Shown one piece after another: positions 11,075 through 50,457 of a stretch of 64,000 bases of DNA. The position numbers were made by a program, and so were the translations under genes. The stretch spans positions 124,001 through 188,000 of IMG/VR virus record IMGVR_UViG_3300031951_000003. One strand, written 5' to 3'. The notes below the pieces were generated by a model. It saw only the letters and a program-made list of their open reading frames with translations, was not told the DNA's origin and ran no database searches. Each line of letters opens with the position of its first letter. Within the stretch, counting starts at the first letter, position 1.

Positions 11075-11078
11075 TTTG

Positions 11079-11403: not shown

Positions 11404-11408
11404 TAATG

Positions 11409-11631: not shown

Positions 11632-11635
11632 ATTA

Positions 11636-11768: not shown

Positions 11769-11773
11769 ATTTG

Positions 11774-11846
11774 CACGCACGGTAGGACTCGAACCTACAA
11801 CACCTAGTTTTGGAGACTAGTACTCTACCAATTGAGCTACGCACGC
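11774..11846 (-). tRNA. tRNA-Trp(CCA)
   Basis: Cloverleaf; loop CTCCAAA. Confidence 0.92.
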
Positions 11847-11851
11847 GTGAC

Positions 11852-12400: not shown

Positions 12401-12428
12401 AATTTTTTATTTATACAAAGATAACGAA

Positions 12429-12953
12429 TTATCTCTCAAGTTTTTTTATACATTCATCTATTTTATCTCTTAATCTACCACCATACCCGAAGTCACCATC
12501 TACCTGAACGTGTCTCCACATCGGAACTCTTGGTTTCATCCATTTATATTGACCATCAAGTTTCATGTCGTCGATTGAAATCCAATTTGAGATTTTATTA
12601 TCTTTTACCCACTTTGTGATTTCTGCTGCTCTTTCCCACTCAATTGAAGGTCTACTAAGTTTATTCCAAAGGTCCTGATGGGTTGTGATATCTACAATCG
12701 GAGCTGTTACACCATAGTATTGGAAAATACGTTTTAATTGTATAAAACTGAAATGTTTTCTCCAATCCGAACTCACAACTAAACTTGCGTTTGTTTCATC
12801 ACAAATTTTTTGAAGTGCTTGACAATCATCTTCAACCCATGGGTAAGGGATTGTAAAAGTTTTACTGTGTTCGTTCAGCGTAACTCTCCCATCACCCCAA
12901 GTTCCCCATGCCAGTGGTCCATCTACATCAATAAAAATAATTTTACGTCTCAT
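12429..12953 (-). CDS. HAD-domain protein of the Swiss-army-knife RNA-repair type (HAD_SAK_2-like)
   Basis: IIFIDVDGPL, VVSSDWR, WISIDD motifs. Confidence 0.75.
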   Translation of the reverse strand: MRRKIIFIDVDGPLAWGTWGDGRVTLNEHSKTFTIPYPWVEDDCQALQKICDETNASLVVSSDWRKHFSFIQLKRIFQYYGVTAPIVDITTHQDLWNKLSRPSIEWERAAEITKWVKDNKISNWISIDDMKLDGQYKWMKPRVPMWRHVQVDGDFGYGGRLRDKIDECIKKLER

Positions 12954-12967
12954 AACAATTTTATTTG

Positions 12968-13041
12968 TTGGAATGGGCGGATTCGAACCGCCGACATCTA
13001 ACGTATCAGATTAGCACTCTAACCAACTGAGTTACATTCCA
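12968..13041 (-). tRNA. tRNA-Ile(GAT)
   Basis: Cloverleaf; loop CTGATAC. Confidence 0.92.
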
Positions 13042-13047
13042 TTATTG

Positions 13048-13119
13048 AGGTCAGGATAGGAATCGAACCTACGTAGAAAGTTTTGCAGACTTCCGCCTAA
13101 GCCACTCGGCCACCCGACC
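13048..13119 (-). tRNA. tRNA-Cys(GCA)
   Basis: Cloverleaf; loop CTGCAAA; U73. Confidence 0.93.
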
Positions 13120-13126
13120 TTAATTG

Positions 13127-13198
13127 TGACCCCTGATGGATTCGAACCATCGACTTCTTCATTAAAAGTGAAGAGCTCTTCCACTGAGCTAAGAGGTC
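13127..13198 (-). tRNA. tRNA-Lys(TTT)
   Basis: Cloverleaf; loop CTTTTAA. Confidence 0.92.
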
Positions 13199-13202
13199 TT
13201 TG

Positions 13203-13275
13203 TGGTAACGGTCAGAATCGAACTGACCACACCTTGGTCTTCAGCCAAGTGCTCTACCAACTGAGCTACGTCACC
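13203..13275 (-). tRNA. tRNA-Phe(GAA)
   Basis: Cloverleaf; loop CTGAAGA. Confidence 0.92.
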
Positions 13276-13280
13276 ATTTG

Positions 13281-13353
13281 TAGTCCCTGTAGGAATCGAA
13301 CCTACGACACCTTGCATGTAAGGCAAGTGCTCTTCCAACTGAGCTAAGAGACT
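13281..13353 (-). tRNA. tRNA-Val(TAC)
   Basis: Cloverleaf; loop CTTACAT. Confidence 0.93.
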
Positions 13354-13360
13354 GAATTTG

Positions 13361-13432
13361 TAGCCCCGCACGGACTCGAACCGAAATCTCCACCGTGAAA
13401 GGGTGGCGTCCTAACCTTTAGACGACGGGGCC
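13361..13432 (-). tRNA. tRNA-Glu(TTC)
   Basis: Cloverleaf; loop CTTTCAC. Confidence 0.92.
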
Positions 13433-13457
13433 AAGAATTACAAACTTACAACCATTA

Positions 13458-13468
13458 TTTCAAAGAAC
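13458..13468 (-). promoter_or_regulatory. boxA-like antitermination element GTTCTTTGAAA
   Basis: Same word upstream of tmRNA; resembles rrn boxA. Confidence 0.5.
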
Positions 13469-13483
13469 CAAAAACTCCTTAAA

Positions 13484-13522
13484 TAAAAAAACCCCGAACT
13501 TCATTTCTGTAGTCCGAGGTTT
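13484..13522 (-). terminator. Attenuator terminator upstream of Glu..Ser tRNA block
   Basis: AAACCTCGGACT/AGTTCGGGGTTT + T run; 5' arm GGACTACAG can pair instead with CTGTAGTCT in the leader ORF. Confidence 0.85.
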
Positions 13523-13555
13523 GTATATATAACTCTTCAGGAATTATAGGCTATC

Positions 13556-13636
13556 TCATGAGACTACAGCGCGTGTCTTAAACCAACAAATCTCTTGTTG
13601 TTTACTATAGACTTTATTACGCACTATTGTTCTCAT
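13556..13636 (-). CDS. Leader peptide 1, MRTIVRNKVYSKQQEICWFKTRAVVS
   Basis: Follows TATATTTG (13654-13661); 3' end carries the antiterminator strand; codons match the downstream tRNAs. Confidence 0.75.
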   Translation of the reverse strand: MRTIVRNKVYSKQQEICWFKTRAVVS

Positions 13637-13695
13637 TATTATTATAATTACTACAAATATAGTAAATCTCTTTTAAAAATCAAATTATTTTTCTG

Positions 13696-13776
13696 TACCC
13701 CAAGAGAGACTCGAACTCTCACGACCGAAGTCATTGGTTCCTAAGACCAACGCGGCTACCATTACGCCATCGGGGT
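13696..13776 (-). tRNA. tRNA-Leu(TAG)
   Basis: Cloverleaf with variable arm; loop CTTAGGA. Confidence 0.92.
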
Positions 13777-13779
13777 ATT

Positions 13780-13995
13780 TTAGTGAGTTCCGTTTGTTAG
13801 AGAAACTCCGTGTTCAAACCCTTTTATGAAATCATTTATTTCTTCTTGGGTCATACTATTATAAACTCTCCCAACAACAAATCCAATTTCATTACCTAAA
13901 TCAGAAATATCGCCGATATAATTAATTTCTTTTTTGTGGTTATCAAATTCATTTAGAATTTTTTCCAAGATTGTATATGTAAACGCTCTAGTCAT
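13780..13995 (-). CDS. Hypothetical protein
   Basis: Start moved to MTRAFTY to avoid overlap with tRNA-Arg. Confidence 0.55.
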   Translation of the reverse strand: MTRAFTYTILEKILNEFDNHKKEINYIGDISDLGNEIGFVVGRVYNSMTQEEINDFIKGFEHGVSLTNGTH

Positions 13996-14007
13996 TTTTT
14001 TAAGTTG

Positions 14008-14079
14008 TAGTCCCGCCAAGAATCGAACTTGGAATTACTGCTTAGAAGGCAGTAGTTATATCCATTTAACTACAGGACC
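14008..14079 (-). tRNA. tRNA-Arg(TCT)
   Basis: Cloverleaf; loop CTTCTAA. Confidence 0.92.
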
Positions 14080-14083
14080 AAAG

Positions 14084-14170
14084 TACCTCAGGTGGGACTT
14101 GAACCCACACGGACATTTTCTGTCCACAAGATTTTAAGTCTTGCGCGTATACCGATTTCGCCACCAAGGT
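14084..14170 (-). tRNA. tRNA-Leu(TAA)
   Basis: Cloverleaf with variable arm; loop CTTAAAA. Confidence 0.93.
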
Positions 14171-14212
14171 ATAAAACAAAAGTAAGGAATCAGTATTGAA
14201 AAAACAAATGAA

Positions 14213-14917
14213 TTAGAACTTTTCTTCCCAAACAGTATCTCTTTCTGTTTCTTCAATATTCATTGTGTGATTTAAGGTTATCTCTTTACGGTCCAAATCA
14301 ATTTCGAAATTACCTTGAGAACCTTCGTTGATTTCCCATCCACCAAAATTATTTTCAAGCATTCTGTATGCGTAGTCTGAAACCACCGCAGGAACAGAAT
14401 CACCATTTGTAAAATCGTCTTCCAAGTAACCAGAGTCACCACTTCCATTGTAGTCAAGTTGAAGGACTCTATCACTAATTTCCTCGTCGTTTTCTAACGT
14501 ATCAAAAAGCTCCATTAAATCCTCATTGTCGTCTTCTTCCAAAGAATGAGTAATAGATTCGGTATTCCCAACATCATAGTAGCTATAGTCATAGGAGATT
14601 GAAATTTCTCTAGTTTTACAATCAATCTCAATCATAACTCTTCCCCAATTGATATCGTCATATTCGGGTTGTTTAATTAGTTCATTTTCACAAACATAAT
14701 AAATGCTTTTCTGAAAAATTGGAATTAATCCTTCAGGAATTTCCGCAACGTAATTATTTGAAAAATGTGTTACATTTTTCCAATCGATATCGTCACAATC
14801 AAAATAAGAGGTATTCATTTCGAATTCGACAAATGCATCTTCCATTCCGATGGAACCTAAATAACGACAGATACGATTTAAATACTTTTTTTCGTCTTTA
14901 GTTAATAAATCTTTCAT
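14213..14917 (-). CDS. DUF6878-like protein
   Basis: YNGSGDSG...GWEINEGSQG C-terminal motif. Confidence 0.6.
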   Translation of the reverse strand: MKDLLTKDEKKYLNRICRYLGSIGMEDAFVEFEMNTSYFDCDDIDWKNVTHFSNNYVAEIPEGLIPIFQKSIYYVCENELIKQPEYDDINWGRVMIEIDCKTREISISYDYSYYDVGNTESITHSLEEDDNEDLMELFDTLENDEEISDRVLQLDYNGSGDSGYLEDDFTNGDSVPAVVSDYAYRMLENNFGGWEINEGSQGNFEIDLDRKEITLNHTMNIEETERDTVWEEKF

Positions 14918-14930
14918 GATAATATAAATA

Positions 14931-15284
14931 TCAATCTTCGAACTCTAATTTTATTGTTTTCAACATCCAAGATGGCCTTGTGTTCGATACCATGTTGTTT
15001 ATCCATTCTTTTGCGGAAGGGATATAATTATTACAATCTTCCTTTACGTGTTGTTCACCAACATATCGGGTGTAGACTGTCTTACCATCACTGTTTTTGA
15101 ATTCAGGACCAAACCTCTTTTCCATTTCGAAAATCCCTTCCGAATGATGTCTAAACATTCTGTGTAAAGAATCCCCGAACCAACCTTTGGTCTCATCCAT
15201 CCACTCATGTAAATGAATATAATCCTCAGGTTTTCCACCAAACTTTTTAGCGGAACTTTTTGCATGTAAATTAGGGTGTGACAT
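14931..15284 (-). CDS. DUF6915-like protein
   Basis: MSHPNLHAKSSAKKFGGKPEDY..H.WMDETK..HRMFRHHSEGIF..EQHVKED; start reassigned. Confidence 0.7.
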   Translation of the reverse strand: MSHPNLHAKSSAKKFGGKPEDYIHLHEWMDETKGWFGDSLHRMFRHHSEGIFEMEKRFGPEFKNSDGKTVYTRYVGEQHVKEDCNNYIPSAKEWINNMVSNTRPSWMLKTIKLEFED

Positions 15285-15870
15285 TTCTCCAAGATTCTTT
15301 TCGATAACCAAATAAATGAAATTGCTCCTCAAAAATTTTATAAACGTAGTTGGATACTTCTTCATCATAAAATTCCTTCCATGGTTTCCTTTTTTCATTC
15401 ATTTGTCCTTCAAATTCTGTTTTGAATTTGTTATTACTTATGAACTCATCAAAGGTTTTCTTGATATCGGAATTCTCCAAATCCAAAAATTTCAAAGACT
15501 TGAGGTCATTCTCCAAATTTTCCTGTTTTATGAATTTATCAAATGGTCTACCCAAAATTTCATAATTTTTATGATATTGTAATTGATAATCATTAATTAT
15601 TTTCGGGTTTTCGAGGGATTCGAAAACCCAAGTTTTGAAATGTTTTTGAAAATCATTCAAATGATGTGAATACAAATAAAACAGGGATACTAGTCTAGAG
15701 TAAGGGTTTCTAACGTTTGATACGAAGAAATAGTCTTTTTTGTTGGAATCAAATGTAAAATGATGGTCAAAAGTTTGAAAACCCATAACACGAAGAAGTT
15801 CTTTAGTTGAACGTGTTCCTGTTCTTTGTGGGGTAAACCAATAAACTTTGTGTTTCTCTGAGATATGCAT
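15271..15870 (-). CDS. Sulfotransferase family 2-like protein
   Basis: PQRTGTRS and VRNPYSRLVS motifs; paralog of 7533-8153. Confidence 0.75.
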   Translation of the reverse strand: MHISEKHKVYWFTPQRTGTRSTKELLRVMGFQTFDHHFTFDSNKKDYFFVSNVRNPYSRLVSLFYLYSHHLNDFQKHFKTWVFESLENPKIINDYQLQYHKNYEILGRPFDKFIKQENLENDLKSLKFLDLENSDIKKTFDEFISNNKFKTEFEGQMNEKRKPWKEFYDEEVSNYVYKIFEEQFHLFGYRKESWRNVTP

Positions 15871-16103
15871 TAGTAAATTTTTGTGTTGTTTCTTCTTGCC
15901 TCTTCCGCTTCCTTATAGATACGTATCCAAGTTAGAGTAATATCAACAGGTGCTAACACCCAACACATGATAATCAAACCTAAAGTATCTAATCCAGGTG
16001 AGATACCAAGACCACCTGCCATAACATCTCTGTTCCATTTTCTTACTGACATGACAAGACAATAAGCCAAACAGATTAAATAATAAGACCAAAAAATTTC
16101 CAT
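15870..16103 (-). CDS. Small membrane protein
   Basis: Two hydrophobic segments; abuts the next gene. Confidence 0.55.
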   Translation of the reverse strand: MEIFWSYYLICLAYCLVMSVRKWNRDVMAGGLGISPGLDTLGLIIMCWVLAPVDITLTWIRIYKEAEEARRNNTKIY

Positions 16104-16119
16104 AACTTTCAAATTTTAG

Positions 16120-16192
16120 TGGAGAATGAGGGAGTCGAACCCACGACAACTTGAATGCAAATCAAGTGCTCTACCAACTGAGCTAATTCCCC
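16120..16192 (-). tRNA. tRNA-Ala(TGC)
   Basis: G3.U70; loop TTTGCAT. Confidence 0.93.
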
Positions 16193-16198
16193 TATTTG

Positions 16199-16271
16199 AG
16201 CCTCCTGTCGGAATCGAACCAACGACCTACTGATTACAAATCAGTTGCTCTACCTGCTGAGCTAAGGAGGC
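16199..16271 (-). tRNA. tRNA-Thr(TGT)
   Basis: Cloverleaf; loop TTTGTAA. Confidence 0.93.
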
Positions 16272-16277
16272 GATGTG

Positions 16278-16350
16278 AGCGGAAGACCAGGCTCGAACTG
16301 GCCACCCCGACCTTGGCAAGGTCGTGCTCTACCGAATGAGCTACTTCCGC
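16278..16350 (-). tRNA. tRNA-Gly(GCC)
   Basis: Cloverleaf; loop TTGCCAA. Confidence 0.94.
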
Positions 16351-16359
16351 AATTTTCTG

Positions 16360-16432
16360 AGCGGGAGACCAGGCTCGAACTGGCCACCTATAGCTTGGAA
16401 GGCTATCGCTCTACCAAATGAGCTACTCCCGC
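16360..16432 (-). tRNA. tRNA-Gly(TCC)
   Basis: Cloverleaf; loop CTTCCAA. Confidence 0.94.
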
Positions 16433-16436
16433 ATAT

Positions 16437-16538
16437 TCCGTTTTTCCTTCACATTTAGCCCAATCACCAGTGAAACAATGATTGGATTTTGGATGGAGAA
16501 GTCTGCAAGGATTTCTCCCATTAGACCGTTACCACGGA
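16437..16538 (-). ncRNA. Candidate structured RNA between tRNA-Asp and tRNA-Gly
   Basis: Closing TCCGT/ACGGA; internal GGAGAA/TTCTCC and CCAATCA/TGATTGG. Confidence 0.4.
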
Positions 16539-16551
16539 CAAACTCTACCAG

Positions 16552-16625
16552 CGGAACGGACGGGGCTCGAACCCGCGACCTCTTGCGTGACAGGCAAGCA
16601 TTCTAGCCAACTGAACTACCGCTCC
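16552..16625 (-). tRNA. tRNA-Asp(GTC)
   Basis: Cloverleaf; loop CTGTCAC. Confidence 0.94.
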
Positions 16626-16630
16626 ATTTG

Positions 16631-16817
16631 AACAGGTTTTTTGTGTCCTTTTACACATCATGACCAACATATTACTACATTGGTGGTTACATTTTCGTCT
16701 TTGGTTAATTACTCCTGACTTATAGTAAACACTACCCTCACCGCTCTGATACCGCGAATCAAGACGGCGTCTTTGGGATTCATATACCGTGGGGTTCCAC
16801 CACAGTCTTCACCTGTT
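16631..16817 (-). ncRNA. Candidate ~190-nt multi-stem ncRNA between tRNA-Asn and tRNA-Asp
   Basis: Ends pair AACAGGT/ACCTGTT; stems CTGTGG/CCACGG, CGTCTT/AAGACG, CCAA/TTGG, TGTGT/ACACA. Confidence 0.5.
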
Positions 16818-16820
16818 TTG

Positions 16821-16892
16821 CGTCCTCTCATGGGCTCGAACCATGGACCCTCTCGTTAACAGCGAGATGCTCTACCGCTGAGCTAAGAAGAC
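16821..16892 (-). tRNA. tRNA-Asn(GTT)
   Basis: Cloverleaf; loop CTGTTAA. Confidence 0.93.
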
Positions 16893-16898
16893 GTTTTG

Positions 16899-16972
16899 TT
16901 GGGAAGACAGGATTCGAACCTGCGGCCCCCTGGTCCCAAACCAGGTGCTCTACCGGGCTGAGCCACTTCCCA
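16899..16972 (-). tRNA. tRNA-Pro(TGG)
   Basis: Cloverleaf; loop TTTGGGA. Confidence 0.93.
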
Positions 16973-37394: not shown

Positions 37395-37482
37395 GGAAAG
37401 ATGGCAGAGCTGGTCGATTGCACCTGACTTGAAATCAGGAGAACGGGGAACTGTTCCGTGGGTTCGAATCCTACTCTTTCCG
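37395..37482 (+). tRNA. tRNA-Ser(TGA)
   Basis: Cloverleaf with long variable arm; loop CTTGAAA. Confidence 0.93.
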
Positions 37483-37487
37483 CACTT

Positions 37488-37645
37488 TGTAAGGTGGTGA
37501 AACGTCCCGCGGACTTGGCATACACACCCCCTCGTCTCGGGGGCGCTGAATTTGAGATAGGTGTTGGATATGGGTTGACCACAAAGCGCGCTAAATGTGT
37601 CCACCACCGAATCACAGCATGAAGGTTCGAATCCTTCCCTTACAG
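37488..37645 (+). ncRNA. Aberrant tRNA-like RNA (158 nt) with D-loop hairpin and giant variable arm
   Basis: Acceptor TGTAAGG/CCTTACA; T-arm GAAGG-TTCGAAT-CCTTC; anticodon-like arm CCCCC-TCGTCTC-GGGGG. Confidence 0.7.
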
Positions 37646-37647
37646 CA

Positions 37648-38220
37648 ATGGTTCATATAAAAAATAATTTTATCGATGAAACAGAAAATAACTTCCTGTT
37701 TTCCTTTCTTAATGAAAAAACCAACAAATCTTTTTCCACTGAGGAAAATTTTTATGAATGGTATGAAATTTCTAAAGATGATGATATTTTCAACTCTCCA
37801 CTTTTTTTGAGAATCTTCAACAGAAATCTTTTTTTTGTAAGAAATTCATATGGCACAAATTTAAAATTACATTACTGTGGATTTGCGAATCAAACAAGAG
37901 GTTTCGATTATCACGCAGATTCAGTTTGGCCAGAAATCCCTGAAAATAGAGTCATGGGTCTTCCATCCAAAGAAAATAACACATATTCAAACTATCAAGG
38001 AAATTGGATACCGAATTATGTTCCGAATAGAAAATACACTACTGTCTTATATCTGAACGAAGGTTTTGATGGTGGTGAAACTCATTTCCCTGTTTTAGAC
38101 ATTTTAGTTAAACCTGAAAAAAATAAAATTCTTGGATTTGGTTGCGATGAGAAATTTGTTCATGGTGTTATGCCAACCACAAATGGGGTGAGAAAAGCGT
38201 TTATCTGCTGGTTTGAATAA
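37648..38220 (+). CDS. 2OG-Fe(II) oxygenase (prolyl-hydroxylase-like)
   Basis: YHAD, RKYTTVLYLN..F.GGET.F, HGV.P...G.R. Confidence 0.82.
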   Translation: MVHIKNNFIDETENNFLFSFLNEKTNKSFSTEENFYEWYEISKDDDIFNSPLFLRIFNRNLFFVRNSYGTNLKLHYCGFANQTRGFDYHADSVWPEIPENRVMGLPSKENNTYSNYQGNWIPNYVPNRKYTTVLYLNEGFDGGETHFPVLDILVKPEKNKILGFGCDEKFVHGVMPTTNGVRKAFICWFE

Positions 38221-42736: not shown

Positions 42737-43237
42737 ATGAAATTATTATTCTCTTTCATATTAGCAACATTTTTGCTAATCCCTGGCCACCACAAAATTC
42801 AAGAACCTAAAAAGGTATTTTTATTACCAATCGAAAATAAAATTGTCATAGGTCCGATGGCAAAAAATCGTAACCTGACGTTTGGTGTTAAAAATATAGT
42901 CTTAGAAAATCTCCAAGAATTAAATTACACCCTCTCAGATTCATTACATAAATCAGACTTTTCTTTGAAGATAGAAATTGTTTATTTCGACATTATGCAA
43001 ACAAATACGGGAATATCTGTGTTCCATAAAAACGATAATGAAACAATCCTTAGAATTAAAGGAACATTGTATAATCAATCAGGTAAAAAATTAAACGATT
43101 ACCTATCTACAGGAAAATCCTCGGAAATCTCTATGTCTACACTGATAATTTCAGAAGGGGGTTCAATAAATCAGCAGTCCGTTTCGAATGTTATAAAAAA
43201 GTCCTCAGAGACATTAATTTTAAATCTTTTCAAGTAA
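42737..43237 (+). CDS. Secreted protein, first gene of surface operon
   Basis: Signal peptide; alpha/beta pattern. Confidence 0.65.
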   Translation: MKLLFSFILATFLLIPGHHKIQEPKKVFLLPIENKIVIGPMAKNRNLTFGVKNIVLENLQELNYTLSDSLHKSDFSLKIEIVYFDIMQTNTGISVFHKNDNETILRIKGTLYNQSGKKLNDYLSTGKSSEISMSTLIISEGGSINQQSVSNVIKKSSETLILNLFK

Positions 43238-43238
43238 A

Positions 43239-45146
43239 ATGAAAAAAACCCTTTTGGGGTTGTTACTATTAATAAGTGGTATTAATGGTTACGCACAAAC
43301 CCCAGAAATAGGGCATTTTCAACAACTCGCTACAGTGCGAAGAGGAGACACATTGGATGTTGCATGGTATTACAAACCAGCACAAGGTGTAGACATCCGT
43401 GGTTTCCAAGTCGATTGGCAGTTTAAGAAAACCCTATTTACCCACATTTCAACCACGGTGGATGCTTCAGTGAATAGCAATACACCTGTTGTTGATTATA
43501 AATCATGGGAAAGCTTCAAGTTCGATTCCTACTCCAATGGGAATTACAACTATACAGCTGACGCAGATTGGACCATCGGAAGAAACTATTTGATTTTATC
43601 AAATGGTAATTCCGTAAGTTCAAATGGTTATATAATTCACAACAAATACAAAATTAATAACGTAGGTCCGAACTACGTTTCAGATTCCATAACCTTAAAT
43701 TGGGCTAGGATGATAAAATTAGATGGGACATCAATAGGTGATAACGTAGCAACACTATCATATAAAAAATTAGCAGTTAAACTTCTTGGTAACTTAACAA
43801 TCTCTGGAAAAGTCTTTTTACCTAGCTCAGTGACTTCATCAGGTTTATTACCAACAATCAATTGTTATGATTTCAATACAAATCAACTAATTTCCTCTAC
43901 AGTTCCTAATTCATCTACAGGTAATTACACTTTAACAAATATTGATGAAAATAAGAAATACAAGATTGAGTTGAAATTCCCACAAGATAGTTTGGCTTCT
44001 TTGAGAGATAGAGCTGTTACAATTTCAGATGCGGTAAAAACATATAATGAATTCACTTCAACAGATGTAAATCAAGTTTATGGTCGACAGTTTTTAAGAC
44101 ATCCTCTTTCATATTTGATAGCAGATTTGAATTTGACAGGAACTTTGGATGCTGGAGACCCATATGGAATTTACGCATCAGTATCAGGTCTTAGACCAAT
44201 TGATTTAACAAAATTGATTAATGTTTTCAAAAAGAGTGAGTATGATAGTTTAGTTACAGTATCCTCTACATGGTCAACTTGGAGCTCATACTCTAATCGA
44301 GGTATAATAGTTACAGATTCTGTTGGACTGACAAATCTTACGTTAGATTTGAAATACTTCATACTAGGAGACGTTGATAGAACTCACTCTTCTCCAGTGT
44401 TTGATGCACAAGGTGGTGAAATTATGGCTGCAAATTTCTCAGGAAATTTCAATATTGATATACCAAATCAATATGTTGTTGGTCAACCAATGTATGTTCC
44501 ATTCAATATTCAAACAAATGGATTACAAAACACAGGTCTACAGTTCGAAATGTCTTACGATATCAACAAGGTTAAATTTGAAGAAATACAATCCAATTTG
44601 GGTGGCCCGTGGTTACAATATGTGAATCACGACCCTCAAAAAGGAATAATCCGTTTCGGTGGAATGAATAATCAAAAAACGGGGGCACTGATTGGAGCGG
44701 TGACCCCGTTTAAATTAAAATTTACCGCTGTCAATCCAAGTGAGGATATCGCCACATCAGTTTATGTAAGAAAATTAATGGATGCGTCGCATTCGAATGG
44801 TGACCACTTCAACATAACACTAAATTCAAGTGTAACAGTCCTTACATATAGAGCCATGATGGTTGTAACACCGTCAGAAACAGACAAAATCACGTTTAGA
44901 CTTTTTCCAAATCCAACAGAGAGTTCGATTAACTTAGAAATAAATTTACCAAAACAAACAGTGGTCAATGCATCTATTTATGATATAGGTGGTAAAGAAA
45001 TACTTAATTTAGGTAAAATCCAATCTAATGATGTTGACGTGAAAATAATTAAAAGATTGAACGTTCAAGGTTTAGCCAATGGAGTTTATCAATTAGTAAT
45101 TTTTGACTCCAAGAATAAAACAACTAAACAATTTATAAAAATTTAA
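43239..45146 (+). CDS. Secreted multidomain protein with dockerin-like and cohesin-like domains and T9SS C-terminal sorting domain
   Basis: ADLNLTGTLDAGD; GLQFEMSYD...IRFGG..FKLKF; FPNPT...IYDIGGK...LANGVY...TKQFIK. Confidence 0.78.
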   Translation: MKKTLLGLLLLISGINGYAQTPEIGHFQQLATVRRGDTLDVAWYYKPAQGVDIRGFQVDWQFKKTLFTHISTTVDASVNSNTPVVDYKSWESFKFDSYSNGNYNYTADADWTIGRNYLILSNGNSVSSNGYIIHNKYKINNVGPNYVSDSITLNWARMIKLDGTSIGDNVATLSYKKLAVKLLGNLTISGKVFLPSSVTSSGLLPTINCYDFNTNQLISSTVPNSSTGNYTLTNIDENKKYKIELKFPQDSLASLRDRAVTISDAVKTYNEFTSTDVNQVYGRQFLRHPLSYLIADLNLTGTLDAGDPYGIYASVSGLRPIDLTKLINVFKKSEYDSLVTVSSTWSTWSSYSNRGIIVTDSVGLTNLTLDLKYFILGDVDRTHSSPVFDAQGGEIMAANFSGNFNIDIPNQYVVGQPMYVPFNIQTNGLQNTGLQFEMSYDINKVKFEEIQSNLGGPWLQYVNHDPQKGIIRFGGMNNQKTGALIGAVTPFKLKFTAVNPSEDIATSVYVRKLMDASHSNGDHFNITLNSSVTVLTYRAMMVVTPSETDKITFRLFPNPTESSINLEINLPKQTVVNASIYDIGGKEILNLGKIQSNDVDVKIIKRLNVQGLANGVYQLVIFDSKNKTTKQFIKI

Positions 45147-45150
45147 AAAA

Positions 45151-45480
45151 ATGTCAGAAGAACAAACACAAGAGCATAATGACGGAACATGGTCAGGTCT
45201 TAAAAAAACAATCGTAGGAACATTAGGAACAGTAGTTGCTGGGGGAGGTGTGTGGTTAAGCACATTATTATTTGGTGGAAATTCGGATGAGGGCTCTCAA
45301 CAACCTCAACCTGCAACACCAAACATTATCATCAACAACACTCAACAACAGCAACAAGCACCAGCTGGTAAGACAGTAGTCATAAAAGAAGTAAGTCCTT
45401 CATCTTCACCTGCTCAACCAAAAAAGGAAGAGCCGAAACCAAAAAAAGATGACTGGACTAAAGAAGACCCAAAATGGTAA
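45151..45480 (+). CDS. Single-TM protein with Q/P-rich tail
   Basis: TM helix then QQPQPATPNIIINNTQQQQ. Confidence 0.65.
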   Translation: MSEEQTQEHNDGTWSGLKKTIVGTLGTVVAGGGVWLSTLLFGGNSDEGSQQPQPATPNIIINNTQQQQQAPAGKTVVIKEVSPSSSPAQPKKEEPKPKKDDWTKEDPKW

Positions 45481-45483
45481 TTT

Positions 45484-46029
45484 ATGCAACCTAATAATGG
45501 ATTTAGAGAACTCTTGAGTTCCATGATGAAAAGAAGATGGTGGATTACCGCATTAGTCCTTGGTGGATTTGTGGTGATAATCGGGGCCATTTTCATGGCA
45601 ATTTTTGAACAAAGTGCAATTAGCGGCGAATGGAAAGAATTATTACTTTTATTACTCGGGGCATTTATCGGGTCATATGGTAAAATCATCGACTATTGGT
45701 TTAGTGATACGGATAAAGACAAAATGTTAGTTCAGAAAATGGATGAGGAAGATGGTATCTCATTTTCAAACACTCAAGACGGGACCGTAAAACCAAAAGA
45801 AGAATCAGTAGCAATACTACCAAAATCTGAGGAATACCAAACCACACCATCAAAAACGGGTGTAGAGATAGACGAGGATGGTGATGGTATAATGGATGGT
45901 ATAGATGAAGATGGTGATGGTATAATCGACATGTATTTCGAACATCGTCAGTGTGAACACGTATGGGGAGACATGGACGGTGATGGGGATGAAGAATGTC
46001 TAAAATGTGGTCTAATTAAAAATATTTAA
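45484..46029 (+). CDS. 2-TM protein with DxDGDG Ca-binding-like repeats and C-terminal Zn motif
   Basis: LLLGAFIGSYGKIIDYWF; DEDGDG twice, DMDGDG; CEH...CLKCG. Confidence 0.7.
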   Translation: MQPNNGFRELLSSMMKRRWWITALVLGGFVVIIGAIFMAIFEQSAISGEWKELLLLLLGAFIGSYGKIIDYWFSDTDKDKMLVQKMDEEDGISFSNTQDGTVKPKEESVAILPKSEEYQTTPSKTGVEIDEDGDGIMDGIDEDGDGIIDMYFEHRQCEHVWGDMDGDGDEECLKCGLIKNI

Positions 46030-46030
46030 A

Positions 46031-46783
46031 ATGAAAAACTTTTTCAAAAGAAATCAGTATGCAATCATTACAATAATCTGGTTTCTGTTAATGTTTTTGA
46101 TTGCAATTAATTTACCTGCCCAGACTGTTGGAACAACAAAGACTGAACAATATAAAGCAAGTTTTGAAACAAAAATCAATATTGACTCATTGATAGACTA
46201 TGATGGTCCTCAAGTTCCTATTCAAATATTAACAATTGGAATAAGTGATGAGGTATATGAACAATACCCTGAACTTAAAGAGAAGAAAGTTGGTTTGGGA
46301 GTTGCGAATATTGTTTTGGAATACTTGTCCGACTTGAATAGATTTACATTCACTGAAGATAAAACTGAAATTAAAAACAGAATGGTTAAACAATTTCAGG
46401 CTTCTCAGAGTGGAATTTCTCAAGACAAATTAGATGGCAGGGGAAAAATAAGATTAGCACATTATTTTGTCACTGTAGAGGTCTATGATTTTTCTGTGTC
46501 GGAAGATGAAACGGTAAATTTAAAGGATGGTGTCAAGAATACTGTCAATACGAGACTTGGTCTTCAAGTTAGATTTACAGATGCAGAAACAGGTGAAATA
46601 GTTGCTGCAAGTGGTCTTGGTGAAGCAAAAACAGTGAGAGAGCTAACATTACTTAACGATGACAATCTAAGTGATGTAAAGTTCAATCAATCAACTATAG
46701 GAATTACCACGAAAAAAGCATTAGATATTGCTTGTAGTAGAATTCTTGTGAGATTAATTAAAAAGGGTAAATTCCCAAGATAA
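46031..46783 (+). CDS. CsgG/TolB-N-like assembly/transport protein
   Basis: GLGVANIV..L..LNRF..E...LQVRFTDAETGEIVAASGLGEA. Confidence 0.7.
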   Translation: MKNFFKRNQYAIITIIWFLLMFLIAINLPAQTVGTTKTEQYKASFETKINIDSLIDYDGPQVPIQILTIGISDEVYEQYPELKEKKVGLGVANIVLEYLSDLNRFTFTEDKTEIKNRMVKQFQASQSGISQDKLDGRGKIRLAHYFVTVEVYDFSVSEDETVNLKDGVKNTVNTRLGLQVRFTDAETGEIVAASGLGEAKTVRELTLLNDDNLSDVKFNQSTIGITTKKALDIACSRILVRLIKKGKFPR

Positions 46784-48159
46784 TGTGCAAAAGATTAAGA
46801 ACTTTTTTAAGTATATTCTTTATCTTATTTCTCAGCTCGAAAGTTGAGGGTCAAGTTATGACCACATCATTTACTGACCCGTGTACCAAAGCTGTCACTA
46901 ATTTTACAATACCTCTCCAAGGAGGGACTGTGATATATTTTTATGGTCAATCAAGAACATTCACCGCAGCAGATGTTGCCAGCGGTGAATTTACCAATTG
47001 GACCAACCAAGTTTATGGGGAATACAGAAAAGTTTCCCCATGTTCGGTTCAATCTACGAATGTAATAAGAAATCAAATAACTTCGCAAGTTATCGGGAAC
47101 GTAATCTCAAGTGTTGTTGGGGCTTTGGCATCCGAAACATCAGGAAACTTAGTAACGGACAATTCAAAATCATCAGATAGTAAAAAAACAAAAAAGAACA
47201 ATGAAAATAGTAATAATTCTAATATCTCTCCCTCTTCTAATAGTGGTAATTCTGGGAATGTTGGGTCTACTGGCGGACTTGGCGGTAGCAGTTCGAACAA
47301 TAGTTCGGGGGATAAAAACAGCAATAGTTCTAATGGTGGCGGTGGGAATAGCACATCTTCAACTTCTCAAGGAGGGAATCAAAATAATCAAGGTGAAAAT
47401 TCTTCAACTAATTCAAAAAATCAAAATGAAGAAGTAGCTGTTACTACTCAGATGAACGTTGACTCAAAGAACGAAAAGGGTGGTAGTAATGGGGGTTCGA
47501 AGGCAACAAGGAATAATCCTGTTGTAGTATCCTCCGATTTAACAAGTGCACAAAATTTAGATAAATCATTTACGGGTATCATTAATGTTGGAATGTCACA
47601 GTCCTCGATGACTGGAGCATCGAGTTGGGGGATAACTTCCATGGTTTGGTTTAATTTTAAACAATTCGCTTTGAATGGGAGATACACCAAAATTCATTTC
47701 AGTAATAATGGAAAACTGAAATGGATTCACAACATCAATCTGACTGGCTTGTATACCTATGGTAATTACATGGGATTTGTTGGTTATAGTGCAATTTTGA
47801 ATGCTGGAAAATATGGAGTAACGGGTATGAACGTGAGTGGTATGATAACAAAAGTCACCGACGATAATAATCTTTTCATAAGTCCATCCATTACCGCCTT
47901 TTATACAAGACCTTTCAAATCGGGAAAAAGATTAATTATTTCACCCGAATTATACATAATATCAACACCCCTTGTTTATTCATCGGTCGATAAAGTCACT
48001 GTAAGTGATAGAACGTTTAGTGGATTTTTGGGTTCGGGTTTTGATTATCAACTTACAAGAAGATTTAAAATAAACGTTAATTATAAAGCAAACCTTAGCA
48101 CAAACCCTGAATTTCCAATCTTGTCGTTCTTTTTAATCGGAAGTAAAATAAATCTATGA
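46783..48159 (+). CDS. Secreted protein with S/N/G low-complexity linker and C-terminal beta-barrel-like domain
   Basis: Signal peptide; SNNSSG-rich linker; amphipathic strands ending IGSKINL. Confidence 0.65.
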   Translation: MCKRLRTFLSIFFILFLSSKVEGQVMTTSFTDPCTKAVTNFTIPLQGGTVIYFYGQSRTFTAADVASGEFTNWTNQVYGEYRKVSPCSVQSTNVIRNQITSQVIGNVISSVVGALASETSGNLVTDNSKSSDSKKTKKNNENSNNSNISPSSNSGNSGNVGSTGGLGGSSSNNSSGDKNSNSSNGGGGNSTSSTSQGGNQNNQGENSSTNSKNQNEEVAVTTQMNVDSKNEKGGSNGGSKATRNNPVVVSSDLTSAQNLDKSFTGIINVGMSQSSMTGASSWGITSMVWFNFKQFALNGRYTKIHFSNNGKLKWIHNINLTGLYTYGNYMGFVGYSAILNAGKYGVTGMNVSGMITKVTDDNNLFISPSITAFYTRPFKSGKRLIISPELYIISTPLVYSSVDKVTVSDRTFSGFLGSGFDYQLTRRFKINVNYKANLSTNPEFPILSFFLIGSKINL

Positions 48160-49589
48160 GAAAATTAATTCTATTATTTCTTCTACTATCATGTTTGGTT
48201 GGATTTTCTCAATCAATAACGGCCCCTGTATCGAGAACATATCAAGTTAATACTTCGAGTCAGGACGCTAGTGGATTTGTTATTAACGGATTTGGTTCTG
48301 AAACGCTTCTAACTTCTATCGGTTTGGTAAATCCACCTGCGGGGGTTACATTTTCAATAACCACAACATTAGGTCTCTCATTTACCACGGGATATAACTC
48401 ATGGAATAATTTGACAAGGATAAGTTTCACGGGAACCATGACAAGTATCAATAATGCACTTGCATCACTTAAAATTAATACGGGTTCATCGACTGGTAAT
48501 GTTCAAATATCGGTTTCAACAACAATAAATCCTGTAGGTTATTATTATAACCCAACCAACGGACACTTTTACAGACCAATTTCTTCACCCGCCACATATG
48601 ACAATTCGAAGGTCTTATCAAATCAACAAACATTTAAAGGTCAAACAGGGTATCTCGTCACAATTACCTCTTCTACAGAGGAGAACTTCATTTTTGCTAA
48701 CGTCCCTCAGAGTAACATTTGGTTTGCACTCAGCGATAGATTACAAGAGGGTTATTGGAGAGTAGATGCTGGTCCTGAGAATGGAACACTTATCAATATT
48801 GGAAATTACAACGGGAATCCACAATCAGGGACTTACCAAAATTGGTGTGGTGGTGAACCTAATGATGCGGGTGGGGAGGATTATGCGGTAACTAAATGGG
48901 GTAGTGGAGGTTGTTGGAACGACTTACCTGGAAGTTGGTCGAACCCCTATATCGTAGAATTTGGAACATGGTCCAATCCTCAAGATGCGACTTTCACCGA
49001 TTTTTATGTTGCAAACACAACTAATAATGTCGCAATAACTAACACTCTTTCAGGAACTGTCTCAATTCCATCTTTATCCCCACTACCAACGTTATCACTA
49101 TATAGGGTTGTGAGCAATTCTGACGTGTTTGTAGAGACGAAAACAGTTAATTCCAATGGAACATACTCATTTACTCTGCCGTCTCAAAATTCGACCTATA
49201 AATTAGTCCCTTCATTAACGACTCAAGGTATATCTAATGTAGATTTCAATTTAGTTTTTGATGAAATCAAAAATGTTAATACACCTCCAATCACACAGTC
49301 AGGTTTGATTATGACAGGGACTAAACAATGGAAAGCTGCAGATGTCAACGAAGATGGTTTAGTTAATTTAGCCGACGCTTATCTAGTTGCCGCACACATA
49401 ACTAATTTTAGACCGATAACGAAGGTATTGTGGTTTCAACCTTCATCATATGACTCAATCACCAAGAACAATTTTGGTTCTGTGAGCCCCGTTACTTTTT
49501 TTTCAGTCACAGTTACAACTTCGAATGTAACTCAAAACATAAAATATTGTATTTTGGGTGATGTCAATCTTTCTCATTCTTCACAATAA
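48156..49589 (+). CDS. Secreted C-type-lectin-domain protein with dockerin-like module
   Basis: NGHFY, GYLVTITS..E..FI, W.ALSD...EG.W, NW..GEPN...EDY...WNDL; AADVNEDG.VNLAD. Confidence 0.8.
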   Translation: MRKLILLFLLLSCLVGFSQSITAPVSRTYQVNTSSQDASGFVINGFGSETLLTSIGLVNPPAGVTFSITTTLGLSFTTGYNSWNNLTRISFTGTMTSINNALASLKINTGSSTGNVQISVSTTINPVGYYYNPTNGHFYRPISSPATYDNSKVLSNQQTFKGQTGYLVTITSSTEENFIFANVPQSNIWFALSDRLQEGYWRVDAGPENGTLINIGNYNGNPQSGTYQNWCGGEPNDAGGEDYAVTKWGSGGCWNDLPGSWSNPYIVEFGTWSNPQDATFTDFYVANTTNNVAITNTLSGTVSIPSLSPLPTLSLYRVVSNSDVFVETKTVNSNGTYSFTLPSQNSTYKLVPSLTTQGISNVDFNLVFDEIKNVNTPPITQSGLIMTGTKQWKAADVNEDGLVNLADAYLVAAHITNFRPITKVLWFQPSSYDSITKNNFGSVSPVTFFSVTVTTSNVTQNIKYCILGDVNLSHSSQ

Positions 49590-49617: not shown

Positions 49618-50457
49618 ATGATACTAAAAGTTGGGTCTAAAGGAGAGGACGTAAAACAACTCCAACAGAAATTAGGGTTGGGCGCCGATGGTATATTCGG
49701 AAGGGGAACCGAAGAAGCGGTTAAAGCTTTTCAATTAAAAAATGGTTTGAACCCTGATGGGATTGTTGGTCCGAATACTTGGCAAAAGATTATGGGACAA
49801 GGTATTACCACCCCTCAAGTTGCCCCTCAAGTTGCTTCTCAAGTTGCCCCTCAAGTCGGAGGATTAAAATTAGAAAAATTGAAAGGTCATATACCTGACA
49901 ATGTAATTGCACAAATACCTGATACAGCATCTAAATTCGGAATCGACACTCCCTTGAAACTTGCTCACTTCTTGGCACAATGTGGTCATGAGAGTGCGGG
50001 TTTCAAAGTTGTAAACGAAAATTTGAACTATTCCGCGAGTGGTTTGAAAGGTATTTTCGGAAAATATTTTAAGGAATCAGGATTGGCTGAGTCATATCAA
50101 AGAAATCCTCAGAAGATTGCAAGTAGAGTTTATGGGGGAAGAATGGGAAATGGACCTGAGTCAACAGGAGAAGGTTTTAAATTTAGAGGTAGAGGATATA
50201 TTCAGTTGACAGGTAAAGACAACTACACTGCTTTTGGAAAAGCAATAAATGAAGATGTTGTATCTAACCCTGATTTGGTATCGACGAAATATCCATTATT
50301 GTCTGCAGCTTGGTTCTTCAGTAAAAATTGCTTGAAAAAATGTGTTGACGCTTCTGATGCAACGGTAACCTCTGTCACAAAGTGTGTCAATGGAGGAACT
50401 ATCGGACTACCCGATAGATTAAAACACTTCAAAGAATATTACAAACTTCTGTCTTAG
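49618..50457 (+). CDS. Endolysin: PG-binding domain plus GH19 catalytic domain
   Basis: LKVGSKGEDVK.LQ..DGIFG..T; AHFLAQCGHES, ENLNYS, FRGRGYIQLTGK.NY, VNGG..GL.DR. Confidence 0.92.
   Translation: MILKVGSKGEDVKQLQQKLGLGADGIFGRGTEEAVKAFQLKNGLNPDGIVGPNTWQKIMGQGITTPQVAPQVASQVAPQVGGLKLEKLKGHIPDNVIAQIPDTASKFGIDTPLKLAHFLAQCGHESAGFKVVNENLNYSASGLKGIFGKYFKESGLAESYQRNPQKIASRVYGGRMGNGPESTGEGFKFRGRGYIQLTGKDNYTAFGKAINEDVVSNPDLVSTKYPLLSAAWFFSKNCLKKCVDASDATVTSVTKCVNGGTIGLPDRLKHFKEYYKLLS
49812..49857 (+). repeat. 12-bp tandem repeat (about 4x) encoding PQVA linker
   Basis: CCTCAAGTTGCC-like units. Confidence 0.8.

What the first reader, a model, noticed from the sequence alone, without database searches (positions are those of the whole stretch)
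42737..49589. Seven-gene phage-encoded cell-surface assembly: CsgG-like protein, T9SS cohesin/dockerin scaffold and dockerin-bearing C-type lectin
Seen: a tightly packed operon of exported or membrane proteins. 43239-45146 and 48156-49589 share a paralogous module (SG.V...G.Y....D.N..G....D.Y...RPI...YDS...KY.ILGDV..(T/S)HSS). Only the first has a cohesin-like domain and a T9SS sorting domain. Inference: the lectin docks on the scaffold, giving a cellulosome-like adhesin displayed on infected cells (aggregation, grazer avoidance or receptor masking), with CsgG-like and barrel proteins as an accessory channel.
Basis: partly seen in the sequence, partly recalled or inferred. Interest (0 to 1): 0.68.

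Follow-up and report, generated by a model that had tools for sequence, protein, structure and literature searches.

The report
Phage cassette of exported cell-envelope proteins
A 321-kb T4-like freshwater phage of Flavobacterium-type bacteria carries a conserved, phage-only block of seven exported or membrane proteins that most likely re-dresses the infected cell's outer surface with a sugar-binding assembly, although no experiment has yet shown what it does.

Summary
Seven same-strand genes (42737-49589) are separated by at most 4 nt or overlap. Five have signal peptides and two have membrane anchors. The shared module of o2 and o7 is real (28% identity, E 6e-11).

Most domain calls are confirmed:
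- T9SS type A sorting domain: above cut-off.
- C-type lectin: above cut-off, with EPN...WND kept in 44 of 44 relatives.
- Two cohesin domains in o2: shown through homologues that pass Pfam's cut-off.
- o5 has a CsgG fold (Z 12.8 to CsgG; profile E 1e-4); o1 is a short paralogue of o5.
- The "dockerin" is one dockerin-type calcium loop-helix inside a larger module, not a canonical dockerin.
- The o6 barrel is probable only.

The cassette recurs in the same order in most of 80 viral loci examined. Its best marker is found in 528 viral contigs, in Flavobacterium phage immuto and in marine phage contigs. It is absent from 185,579 prokaryote genomes apart from one 2.7-kb contig. It lies 54 kb from the virion genes.

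Gene fusions and fissions at the module/cohesin junction support it indirectly. A curli-type pore role for o5 is doubtful.

Function is unproven. Interest is moderate to high.

The parts
42737..43237 (+). o1, 166 aa: signal peptide plus a short CsgG-fold domain, a trimmed paralogue of o5
   Evidence: Profile-profile comparison of the o1 family (A2) with the o5 family (A3): probability 93.6%, E 2.2e-7 over 120 columns. Homologue im19 in phage immuto. Present in 74 of 82 loci. No Pfam, PHROG or PDB sequence hit.
43239..45146 (+). o2, 635 aa scaffold: signal peptide, N-terminal cohesin-like domain (residues 21-184), shared module (185-390), second cohesin (391-550), T9SS type A sorting domain (555-633)
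   Evidence: Por_Secre_tail 3.2e-9 and TIGR04183 2.1e-8, both above cut-off. Residues 420-634 match immuto im15 at E 3e-14. im15 itself hits Pfam Cohesin at 5.9e-9. The N-terminal domain's homologue in L075 hits Cohesin at 24.8 bits against a cut-off of 24.1. Architecture census.
44901..45137 (+). T9SS type A C-terminal sorting domain of o2
   Evidence: It is the only such domain in the 321-kb genome.
45151..45480 (+). o3, 109 aa: N-in single-span inner-membrane protein with a proline/glutamine/lysine-rich periplasmic linker and an invariant C-terminal peptide ending in Trp
   Evidence: Sequence. Family comparison of N- and C-termini. Homologue im16 at 57% identity over residues 1-53. Present in 73-79 loci.
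45484..46029 (+). o4, 181 aa: two-span inner-membrane protein with an acidic DxDxDG-rich tail that also carries His and Cys; topology inferred as N-in, C-in
   Evidence: Hydrophobic spans and sequence. 53-85% identity across loci. No family hit. The tail is missing in the CTD-less lineage.
46031..46783 (+). o5, 250 aa: signal peptide plus a CsgG-fold domain. It is the most conserved gene of the cassette and is phage-specific.
   Evidence: AlphaFold2 model at pLDDT 80.4. Foldseek top hits are all CsgG, E 3e-7. VIA Z 12.8, rmsd 4.3 A, 166 residues aligned. Family profile against the CsgG PDB chain, E 1.2e-4. 16 of 38 family members hit Pfam CsgG, best 1.9e-17. Nearest named Atlas clusters are all CsgG/HfaB. 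5751 relatives, 528 viral contigs, and one hit in prokaryote genomes.
46783..48159 (+). o6, 458 aa: signal peptide, small N-domain with two invariant cysteines (46852-47133), variable Ser/Asn/Gly-rich linker (47134-47499), and a C-terminal domain that is probably an outer-membrane beta-barrel (47500-48156)
   Evidence: Domain limits. Linker composition. Alignments A6 and A7. Sub-threshold OMP_b-brl hits in 4 of 23 members and one DUF5777 hit. Nearest named Atlas clusters are porins at 0.92. Alternating hydrophobic pattern and a hydrophobic C-terminus. No PDB sequence hit.
48156..49589 (+). o7, 477 aa: signal peptide, N-domain, C-type lectin (48639-48953; EPN...WND at 48855-48923), and the shared module (49023-49586) containing one dockerin-type loop-helix (49317-49400)
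   Evidence: Lectin_C 1.1e-5, 26.5 bits against a cut-off of 22.6; Dockerin_1 0.0022, 18.6 bits against 22.9. EPN...WND is kept in 44 of 44 distinct relatives. The module profile hits only dockerins in the PDB, E 0.004-1, always through the one repeat. Heads are swapped for PA14 or gain an Ig_7 domain in other loci.
49618..50457 (+). o8, neighbouring endolysin (PG_binding_1 + GH19), not a constant member of the cassette
   Evidence: Adjacent in only 32 of 82 loci.

Best explanation
The cassette is a phage-encoded set of proteins that the infected Flavobacterium-type cell exports through its own Sec pathway and builds into its envelope.

Shown:
- o2 is a scaffold with two cohesin domains and a C-terminal tag that the host's type IX secretion system recognises.
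- o7 is a calcium-type lectin whose sugar-binding residues (EPN...WND) are intact.
- o2 and o7 share a roughly 190-residue module made of a beta-sandwich and one dockerin-type calcium loop-helix.
- o5 and o1 have the CsgG/LptE/PelC fold.

Inferred:
- The module is the docking piece. It binds a cohesin, so the lectin, which has no sorting tag of its own, rides on or joins o2. The host T9SS carries the pair across the outer membrane and leaves it on the cell surface.
- o6 (an outer-membrane barrel with a stalk and a small head) and the two CsgG-fold proteins form an outer-membrane platform or plug-and-barrel unit rather than a curli-type pore.
- o3 tethers this platform to the inner membrane through its invariant C-terminal peptide, and o4 also takes part.

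Most likely purpose: to put a glycan-binding coat on the infected cell. Either it grips polysaccharide particles or neighbouring cells, or it covers the host's own surface glycans and so blocks further phage adsorption.
For: - Export signals on five proteins and membrane spans on two.
- Sorting domain above cut-off.
- Cohesins confirmed through homologues.
- Lectin above cut-off, with EPN...WND in 44 of 44 relatives.
- Heads vary (lectin, PA14, added Ig_7) on a constant module tail, as expected for an anchored, outward-facing binding subunit.
- Fusion and fission evidence: in immuto the o2 gene is split exactly at the module/cohesin junction into im14 (which ends in LGDVNGTGLN) and im15 (its own signal peptide, cohesin, sorting domain). 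In 14 loci the lectin-module protein carries its own cohesin. The module is always followed either by a cohesin or by the end of the protein.
- In the lineage without a fused sorting domain, small lipoproteins with recurrent sub-threshold sorting-domain/DUF3244 hits appear, and only there. This suggests another way of surface anchoring.
- CsgG fold of o5 and o1. Other proteins with this fold work with barrels or rings at the outer membrane: LptE, PelC and TraT are all in the hit list.
- Conserved gene order in freshwater, Baltic and marine phages.
- Position away from the virion genes.
- Phage-encoded T9SS cargo has a precedent (PMC7468147).
Against:
- o2 itself gives no direct Pfam cohesin hit.
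- The dockerin-like element is a single repeat below cut-off, so classical cohesin-dockerin binding cannot be assumed.
- 15 scaffold-type and 14 lectin-type proteins lack any sorting domain, so T9SS display is not the conserved core.
- The most conserved genes are o5 and o4, whose roles are the least understood.
- There are no expression data.
- The host is inferred only from immuto and from the sorting domain.
- The barrel assignment rests on sub-threshold hits.
Confidence: 0.5

Rival explanations
1. Glycan-capture or nutrient-uptake aid. The cassette works like a miniature polysaccharide-utilisation surface complex: lectin and cohesin proteins catch glycans at the surface and hand them to outer-membrane transport, which feeds the infected cell and raises the burst size.
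For: Carbohydrate-binding heads (C-type lectin, PA14). In a sister lineage a TonB-dependent receptor of the CarbopepD_reg-Plug-barrel type and a class-3 lipase are inserted inside the cassette. The Cryophage T9SS cargo includes glycoside hydrolases.
Against: The window's cassette has no transporter, no SusD-like protein and no glycoside hydrolase. The TonB-dependent receptor is found in only 10 of 82 loci.
Confidence: 0.17
2. Surface exclusion or receptor masking centred on the periplasmic and outer-membrane proteins. o5 and o1 form rings like TraT or LptE plugs, and together with o6 they alter or block a host outer-membrane machine or receptor. The lectin coat shields surface glycans, so other phages and the phage's own progeny do not adsorb to infected cells or debris.
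For: o5 is conserved at 73-100% identity while its neighbours fall to 22-50%, which fits a conserved host target. The decameric surface-exclusion lipoprotein TraT is among the fold matches at Z 8.0. In immuto the cassette lies among early-type replication genes.
Against: TraT sits far down the hit list, in the range where fold matches can be generic. No receptor is known. Nothing was tested directly.
Confidence: 0.18
3. Lysis or egress device. o3 (a type II inner-membrane protein reaching across the periplasm) and the outer-membrane proteins act like a spanin or outer-membrane disruptor. They would work together with the neighbouring endolysin.
For: The endolysin follows the cassette directly in the window and in 32 of 82 loci. 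o3 has the topology of an i-spanin and a conserved C-terminal docking peptide. o4 and a 99-aa two-span protein in other loci have holin-like topologies.
Against: The endolysin is not adjacent in most loci or in immuto. o3 has a low-complexity linker rather than a coiled coil. The window has no small outer-membrane lipoprotein partner. Lectins, cohesins and a sorting domain have no role in lysis.
Confidence: 0.1
4. The proteins are virion parts, such as fibres or decoration proteins with lectin heads.
For: Lectin, Ig-like and PA14 domains also occur on phage fibres and capsids. The heads vary between lineages, as receptor-binding proteins do.
Against: Sec signal peptides are kept across homologues, and there is a T9SS sorting domain. 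There are no PHROG structural hits. The cassette lies 54 kb from the capsid-terminase block and, in immuto, among replication genes.
Confidence: 0.04

Closest known systems
Non-cellulosomal cohesin-dockerin pairs and the cellulosome scaffoldin principle
   Same: Cohesin domains on a surface-anchored scaffold. A partner protein carries a dockerin-type calcium loop-helix with the DxNxDGxxNxxD pattern. Functional heads are modular.
   Different: Only one dockerin repeat is present, embedded in a roughly 190-residue module with a beta-sandwich, and it scores below the Pfam cut-off. There are no enzymes or CBM scaffoldin. Anchoring is by a T9SS sorting domain rather than an SLH domain or sortase. 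The system is encoded by a phage. Binding is untested.
T9SS-secreted surface adhesins of Flavobacterium, such as the lectin-domain gliding adhesin RemA (from my own knowledge, not tested here)
   Same: A lectin-bearing protein displayed on the surface through the type IX system. Possible roles are binding polysaccharide and cell aggregation.
   Different: Here the lectin has no sorting domain of its own and would need the scaffold. The genes are viral. The lectin type differs (C-type against SUEL-type).
Phage-encoded T9SS cargo in 'Cryophage' (Bellas et al. 2020, PMC7468147)
   Same: A large phage of Bacteroidota-type hosts that carries genes with type A sorting domains, including a PA14 protein. 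They are variable between strains and were proposed to change the host surface or to act in superinfection.
   Different: Those are single enzymes or binding proteins. Here there is a fixed seven-gene cassette with cohesins, CsgG-fold proteins, a barrel and inner-membrane tethers.
CsgG curli channel and CsgG-fold partners of outer-membrane barrels (LptE-LptD, PelC-PelB)
   Same: o5 shares the fold (Z 12.8 to CsgG, 10.1 to PelC, 9.4 to LptE) and is encoded next to a probable barrel.
   Different: About 10% sequence identity. No lipobox. Acidic residues in the hairpin that spans the membrane in CsgG. No curlin-like substrate identified. Oligomeric state unknown.
Flavobacterium phage vB_FspM_immuto genes 13-19 (MW353175)
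   Same: Homologous cassette: lectin-module, domain-module, cohesin-sorting domain, small membrane protein, o5 homologue at 54.5% identity, o6 homologue and o1 homologue. It is the only cultured phage that carries it.
   Different: The gene order is rotated, the scaffold is split into two genes, there is no o4, and no endolysin is adjacent. All are annotated as hypothetical except the lectin and the cohesin.

Membership tests
T9SS type A cargo (Por_Secre_tail PF18962 / TIGR04183) | C-terminal sorting domain scoring above the curated cut-offs, at the very end of the protein | tested here: met
   o2 residues 555-633 of 635: 37.4 bits against 27 (Pfam) and 34 bits against 23 (NCBIfam).
T9SS type A cargo (Por_Secre_tail PF18962 / TIGR04183) | N-terminal Sec signal peptide | tested here: met
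   o2 starts with a basic N-region, a hydrophobic core and an ...YAQ|T site. This is by inspection only; no predictor was run.
T9SS type A cargo (Por_Secre_tail PF18962 / TIGR04183) | Secretion depends on a host T9SS | not testable with these tools
   The host is inferred as Flavobacterium from immuto. Sister lineages lack the domain.
Cohesin (PF00963) | Profile match of the protein itself | tested here: not met
   No Cohesin hit for o2 even at E 10.
Cohesin (PF00963) | Homology to proteins that pass the profile cut-off | tested here: met
   For the C-terminal domain, o2 420-634 matches im15 at E 3e-14, and im15 hits Cohesin at 36.7 bits against a cut-off of 24.1. For the N-terminal domain, the L075 homologue hits Cohesin at 24.8 bits against 24.1.
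Dockerin type I (PF00404) | Two tandem loop-helix (F-hand) repeats scoring above cut-off | tested here: not met
   One repeat only (o7 388-415), 18.6 bits against 22.9. The second GDVN loop is cut off by the end of the protein.
Dockerin type I (PF00404) | Calcium-ligand pattern in the repeat | tested here: met
   The o7 repeat DVNEDGLVNLAD fits positions 1, 3, 5, 9 and 12. The module profile's PDB hits are all dockerins.
Dockerin type I (PF00404) | Binds a cohesin | not tested
C-type lectin (PF00059) | Profile above cut-off, and calcium/sugar-site motifs EPN and WND | tested here: met
   26.5 bits against 22.6. EPN...WND at o7 234-256 and in 44 of 44 relatives.
CsgG/HfaB family (PF03783) | Sequence-profile relation to CsgG | tested here: met
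   o5 alone gives no Pfam hit. The family profile A3 hits E. coli CsgG at E 1.2e-4, and 16 of 38 members hit PF03783.
CsgG/HfaB family (PF03783) | CsgG fold | tested here: met
   Foldseek E 3e-7, probability 1.0. VIA Z 12.8, and the top eight entries are all CsgG.
CsgG/HfaB family (PF03783) | Lipoprotein (lipobox cysteine) | tested here: not met
   The window's o5 and its close relatives end the signal peptide with ...AQ|T(V/I)G and have no Cys there. Distant relatives do have one.
CsgG/HfaB family (PF03783) | Nonameric pore with membrane-spanning hairpins and a curlin-type substrate | tested here: inconclusive
   The model has a long hairpin at 145-184, but it carries the conserved acidic run S-E-D-E (E158 nearly invariant, D159 and E160 invariant). 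The oligomer was not modelled. No curlin-like gene was seen.
Outer-membrane beta-barrel (o6 C-domain) | Profile match or fold of a barrel | tested here: inconclusive
   OMP_b-brl at 0.0092-0.051 in 4 of 23 members, and DUF5777 at 0.0057. Atlas porin clusters at 0.92.
Two-component spanin | Type II inner-membrane protein with a periplasmic coiled coil, plus a small outer-membrane lipoprotein | tested here: not met
   o3 has the topology but a low-complexity linker. The window's cassette has no lipoprotein.

The most novel reading that the evidence does not exclude
The cassette is a self-contained, phage-built trans-envelope apparatus. It would consist of an inner-membrane tether (o3 and o4), a ring of CsgG-fold proteins (o5 and o1) and a barrel (o6). 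This apparatus itself would export or anchor a polymerising cohesin/half-dockerin lectin array on the cell surface. The host T9SS tag would be only an optional add-on, since whole lineages do without it.
Probability: 0.12. Interest if true: 0.85.

Novelty: new variant of a known kind. Interest (0 to 1): 0.62.

Why it matters
Large T4-like phages of Bacteroidota are abundant in lakes and seas. This cassette is among their best-conserved accessory blocks: its marker protein o5 has 5751 relatives at 90% clustering and occurs in 528 viral contigs, and near-identical DNA is found in at least 16 freshwater studies. No member of the cassette has a known function.

If the phage re-dresses infected cells with a lectin coat through the host's type IX secretion system, that would be a new way for viruses to change particle attachment, aggregation or phage susceptibility in key polysaccharide degraders. 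It would also extend cohesin-dockerin-type assembly to viruses.

The cultured phage immuto and its Flavobacterium host make this directly testable.

Tried and rejected
Docking therefore has no verdict.
- The first fold of o5, made with a shallow alignment, was poor (pLDDT 60) and was not used.
- PDB profile searches gave nothing meaningful for o1, the o6 C-domain, the o6 N-domain and o2.
- PHROGs gave nothing for o1, o2 or o4-o7, and only a low-complexity 'Zot-like' match for o3. I discount that match.
- NCBIfam added nothing beyond the sorting domain.
- The sigma-70 promoter scan was at chance level, and the terminator scan (10 sites against 4.6 expected) was not pursued.
- Searches restricted to the o7 module and to the o6 barrel found only the same phage families, with no named bacterial relatives.
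- The sequencing-run search found DNA holders only and no RNA.
- Literature searches found no paper on phage cohesin-dockerin, on phage CsgG together with T9SS, or on the immuto cassette.
- The cellulosome reading was rejected as a membership claim because the cassette has no enzymes and no canonical dockerin.
- The virion-part reading was rejected, as set out under the rival explanations.
- Only genetic code 11 was used.
Full report
**The setting**

The window is bases 124001-188000 of a 321,139-bp virus record with direct terminal repeats. The record has a T4-type major capsid gene at 103-105 kb, a large terminase at 112-113 kb and a sheath-like gene at 51 kb. The window carries 24 tRNAs and a tmRNA. 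This is a T4-like jumbo phage. Only genetic code 11 was used.

**The observation**

| Gene | Coordinates |
|---|---|
| o1 | 42737-43237 |
| o2 | 43239-45146 |
| o3 | 45151-45480 |
| o4 | 45484-46029 |
| o5 | 46031-46783 |
| o6 | 46783-48159 |
| o7 | 48156-49589 |

- The gaps are 1-4 nt, and the last two junctions overlap.
- o1, o2, o5, o6 and o7 start with signal-peptide-like sequences. o3 has one hydrophobic span and o4 has two.

**Domain claims**

*Sorting domain.* The T9SS type A sorting domain of o2 is above both curated cut-offs. It is the only one in the genome.

*Lectin.* The C-type lectin of o7 is above cut-off. All 44 distinct relatives keep the EPN...WND calcium/sugar site. From general knowledge of C-type lectins, this site points to mannose/GlcNAc-type ligands.

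*Cohesins.* o2 itself gives no Pfam cohesin hit.
- Residues 420-634 match protein im15 of Flavobacterium phage immuto at E 3e-14. im15 hits Cohesin at 5.9e-9 and also carries the sorting domain.
- The N-terminal domain of an o2 homologue (L075) also passes the Cohesin cut-off.
- o2 therefore has two cohesin-type domains flanking the shared module.

*Dockerin-like element.* It is one repeat (o7 388-415) that scores 18.6 bits against a cut-off of 22.9.
- A profile of the module finds only dockerins in the PDB, weakly (E 0.004-1), and always through that single loop-helix.
- The module starts with a Cna-B/CarboxypepD_reg-type beta-sandwich. It ends in a GDVN loop that is cut short by the end of the protein.
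- It is dockerin-like but not a dockerin.

*o5 and o1.* A fold of o5 from a shallow alignment failed (pLDDT 60).
- A whole-library profile search gave 268 representative clusters. An alignment that included distant members (A3) was built from them.
- 16 of 38 members of A3 hit Pfam CsgG, best 1.9e-17. The A3 profile hits E. coli CsgG structures at E 1.2e-4.
- The new model has pLDDT 80.4.
- Foldseek's top hits are all CsgG, E 3e-7.
- VIA gives Z 12.8 (rmsd 4.3 A, 166 residues aligned) for CsgG, ahead of PelC (10.1), LptE (9.4), FlgT and TraT (8.0).
- The Atlas feature search independently pointed to CsgG/HfaB.
- o1 is a shorter paralogue of o5 (hhalign probability 93.6%, E 2.2e-7).

Several features argue against a curli-type pore:
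- Close relatives of o5 have no lipobox cysteine.
- The model's long hairpin carries the conserved acidic run S-E-D-E.
- Distant bacterial relatives use the domain as a periplasmic module fused to caspase-like domains or to Ser/Thr kinases.

*o6.* It has three parts:
- a small N-domain with two invariant cysteines;
- a Ser/Asn/Gly-rich linker of variable length;
- a conserved 215-residue C-domain.

The C-domain shows alternating hydrophobicity and has a hydrophobic C-terminus. It gives sub-threshold OMP_b-brl hits and has porin-like Atlas neighbours. A barrel is probable but not shown.

*o3.* It is an N-in single-span protein. A variable proline/alanine/lysine/glutamine linker ends in an invariant peptide...GDEFKE.P.W at the C-terminus. 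This suggests a docking peptide that reaches across the periplasm.

*o4.* It has two spans and an acidic tail with His and Cys. Its function is unknown.

**Distribution**

- o5 has 5751 relatives in the word search. The best 120 are 75-100% identical to o5, and none has a Pfam domain on record.
- 528 IMG/VR contigs encode it.
- Among one genome each of 185,579 prokaryote species, there is a single hit, on a 2.7-kb MAG contig.
- Among 50,697 GenBank phage records, only the immuto phages carry it. Their host is Flavobacterium sp. LMO8.
- In 82 loci, all seven genes recur in the same order in 66-75 of them. The endolysin o8 is adjacent in only 32.
- A 32%-identical o5 relative lies in Tara Oceans phage-like contigs. 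There it sits next to a 646-aa Cohesin + Por_Secre_tail protein, among recombination and replication genes.
- Near-identical DNA of the window's cassette is held by lake and freshwater metagenomes from at least 16 studies. No RNA run holds it.

**Architecture census** (Pfam checks)

| Count | Architecture |
|---|---|
| 55 | cohesin-module-cohesin-sorting domain |
| 15 | cohesin-module-cohesin, without a sorting domain |
| 36 | N-domain-lectin-module |
| 16 | lectin-insert-module (for example Ig_7) |
| 14 | N-domain-lectin-module-cohesin |
| a few (one checked in Pfam: L066) | PA14-module |

- The module is always followed either by a cohesin or by the end of the protein.
- In immuto, the scaffold is split precisely at that junction.
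- This fusion and fission pattern is the best indirect support for a functional link between module and cohesin.

The loci without a fused sorting domain, and only those, carry two small lipoproteins. One of them gives recurrent sub-threshold Por_Secre_tail/DUF3244 hits. Some of these loci also hold a class-3 lipase and a TonB-dependent receptor inside the cassette.

**Interpretation**

Four lines of evidence place the products in the host envelope rather than in the virion:
- the export signals;
- the sorting tag or lipoprotein anchors;
- the variable sugar-binding heads on a constant tail;
- the position of the cassette outside the virion block.

My best reading (confidence about 0.5) is a phage-directed surface assembly.
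- o2 is displayed through the host T9SS.
- The lectin o7 joins o2 through the module.
- o6, o5 and o1 form an outer-membrane platform that o3 and o4 tether to the inner membrane.

The purpose (adhesion or aggregation, glycan capture, or masking against further adsorption) cannot be settled here. The rival explanations are scored separately.

**Novelty**

- Phage-encoded T9SS cargo has been reported (PMC7468147).
- A phage protein named CsgG already exists in BFVD.
- I found no description of this cassette, or of cohesin/dockerin-like assemblies in phages.
- I class it as a new variant of known kinds, namely phage accessory genes that remodel the host surface.
- It is well suited to experiment in the immuto-Flavobacterium pair.

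Noticed in passing
window 1442-1835 and 10989-16972, 37395-37483: A tmRNA gene (tag AEEATVVA) and 24 tRNA genes, most of them in a dense minus-strand array. This is typical of a jumbo phage.
   Followed up: no
window 49618-50457: Endolysin with PG_binding_1 and a GH19 chitinase-like domain and no signal peptide. No obvious holin lies in the three ORFs downstream.
   Followed up: partly
window 45151-45480 (o3) and homologues in about 45 loci: The o3 family keeps an invariant C-terminal peptide that ends in Trp, after a hypervariable low-complexity linker. It looks like a docking peptide for an unknown partner.
   Followed up: partly
L063:8718-9458, 10679-13162, 13159-14355: A sister phage lineage carries a class-3 lipase, an 827-aa TonB-dependent receptor (CarbopepD_reg + Plug + barrel) and a 398-aa unknown protein, all inserted between the o5 and o6 homologues.
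   Followed up: partly
L063:6184-6528 and 6525-6896 (also L057-L081): Two small lipoproteins are found only in loci whose cohesin proteins lack a fused T9SS sorting domain. One gives recurrent sub-threshold Por_Secre_tail/DUF3244 hits, and its mature N-terminus is acidic.
   Followed up: partly
L063:7620-7919 and 37 other loci: A 99-aa protein with two hydrophobic spans sits between the o4 and o5 homologues in 38 loci. It is absent from the window.
   Followed up: no
P0223, P0244, P0249, P0259, P0264: Distant bacterial relatives of o5 are fused to caspase-like (HC dyad) domains, or form the extracytoplasmic part of Ser/Thr protein kinases.
   Followed up: no
L085:2824-7724 (Tara Oceans contig): A marine phage-like contig holds a divergent version of the cassette: a 646-aa Cohesin + sorting-domain protein, small proteins, an Endonuclease_NS gene inserted among them, an o5 relative at 32% identity, and proteins of 343 and 170 aa.
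   Followed up: partly
window 37597-38220: An ORF with a 2OG-Fe(II) oxygenase-type match (phrog_61, 3.3e-16), upstream of the cassette.
   Followed up: no
window 42737-48700: Near-identical DNA is present in lake and freshwater metagenomes, and in 'fungus metagenome'-labelled runs, from at least 16 studies between 2017 and 2025. No RNA run holds it.
   Followed up: no
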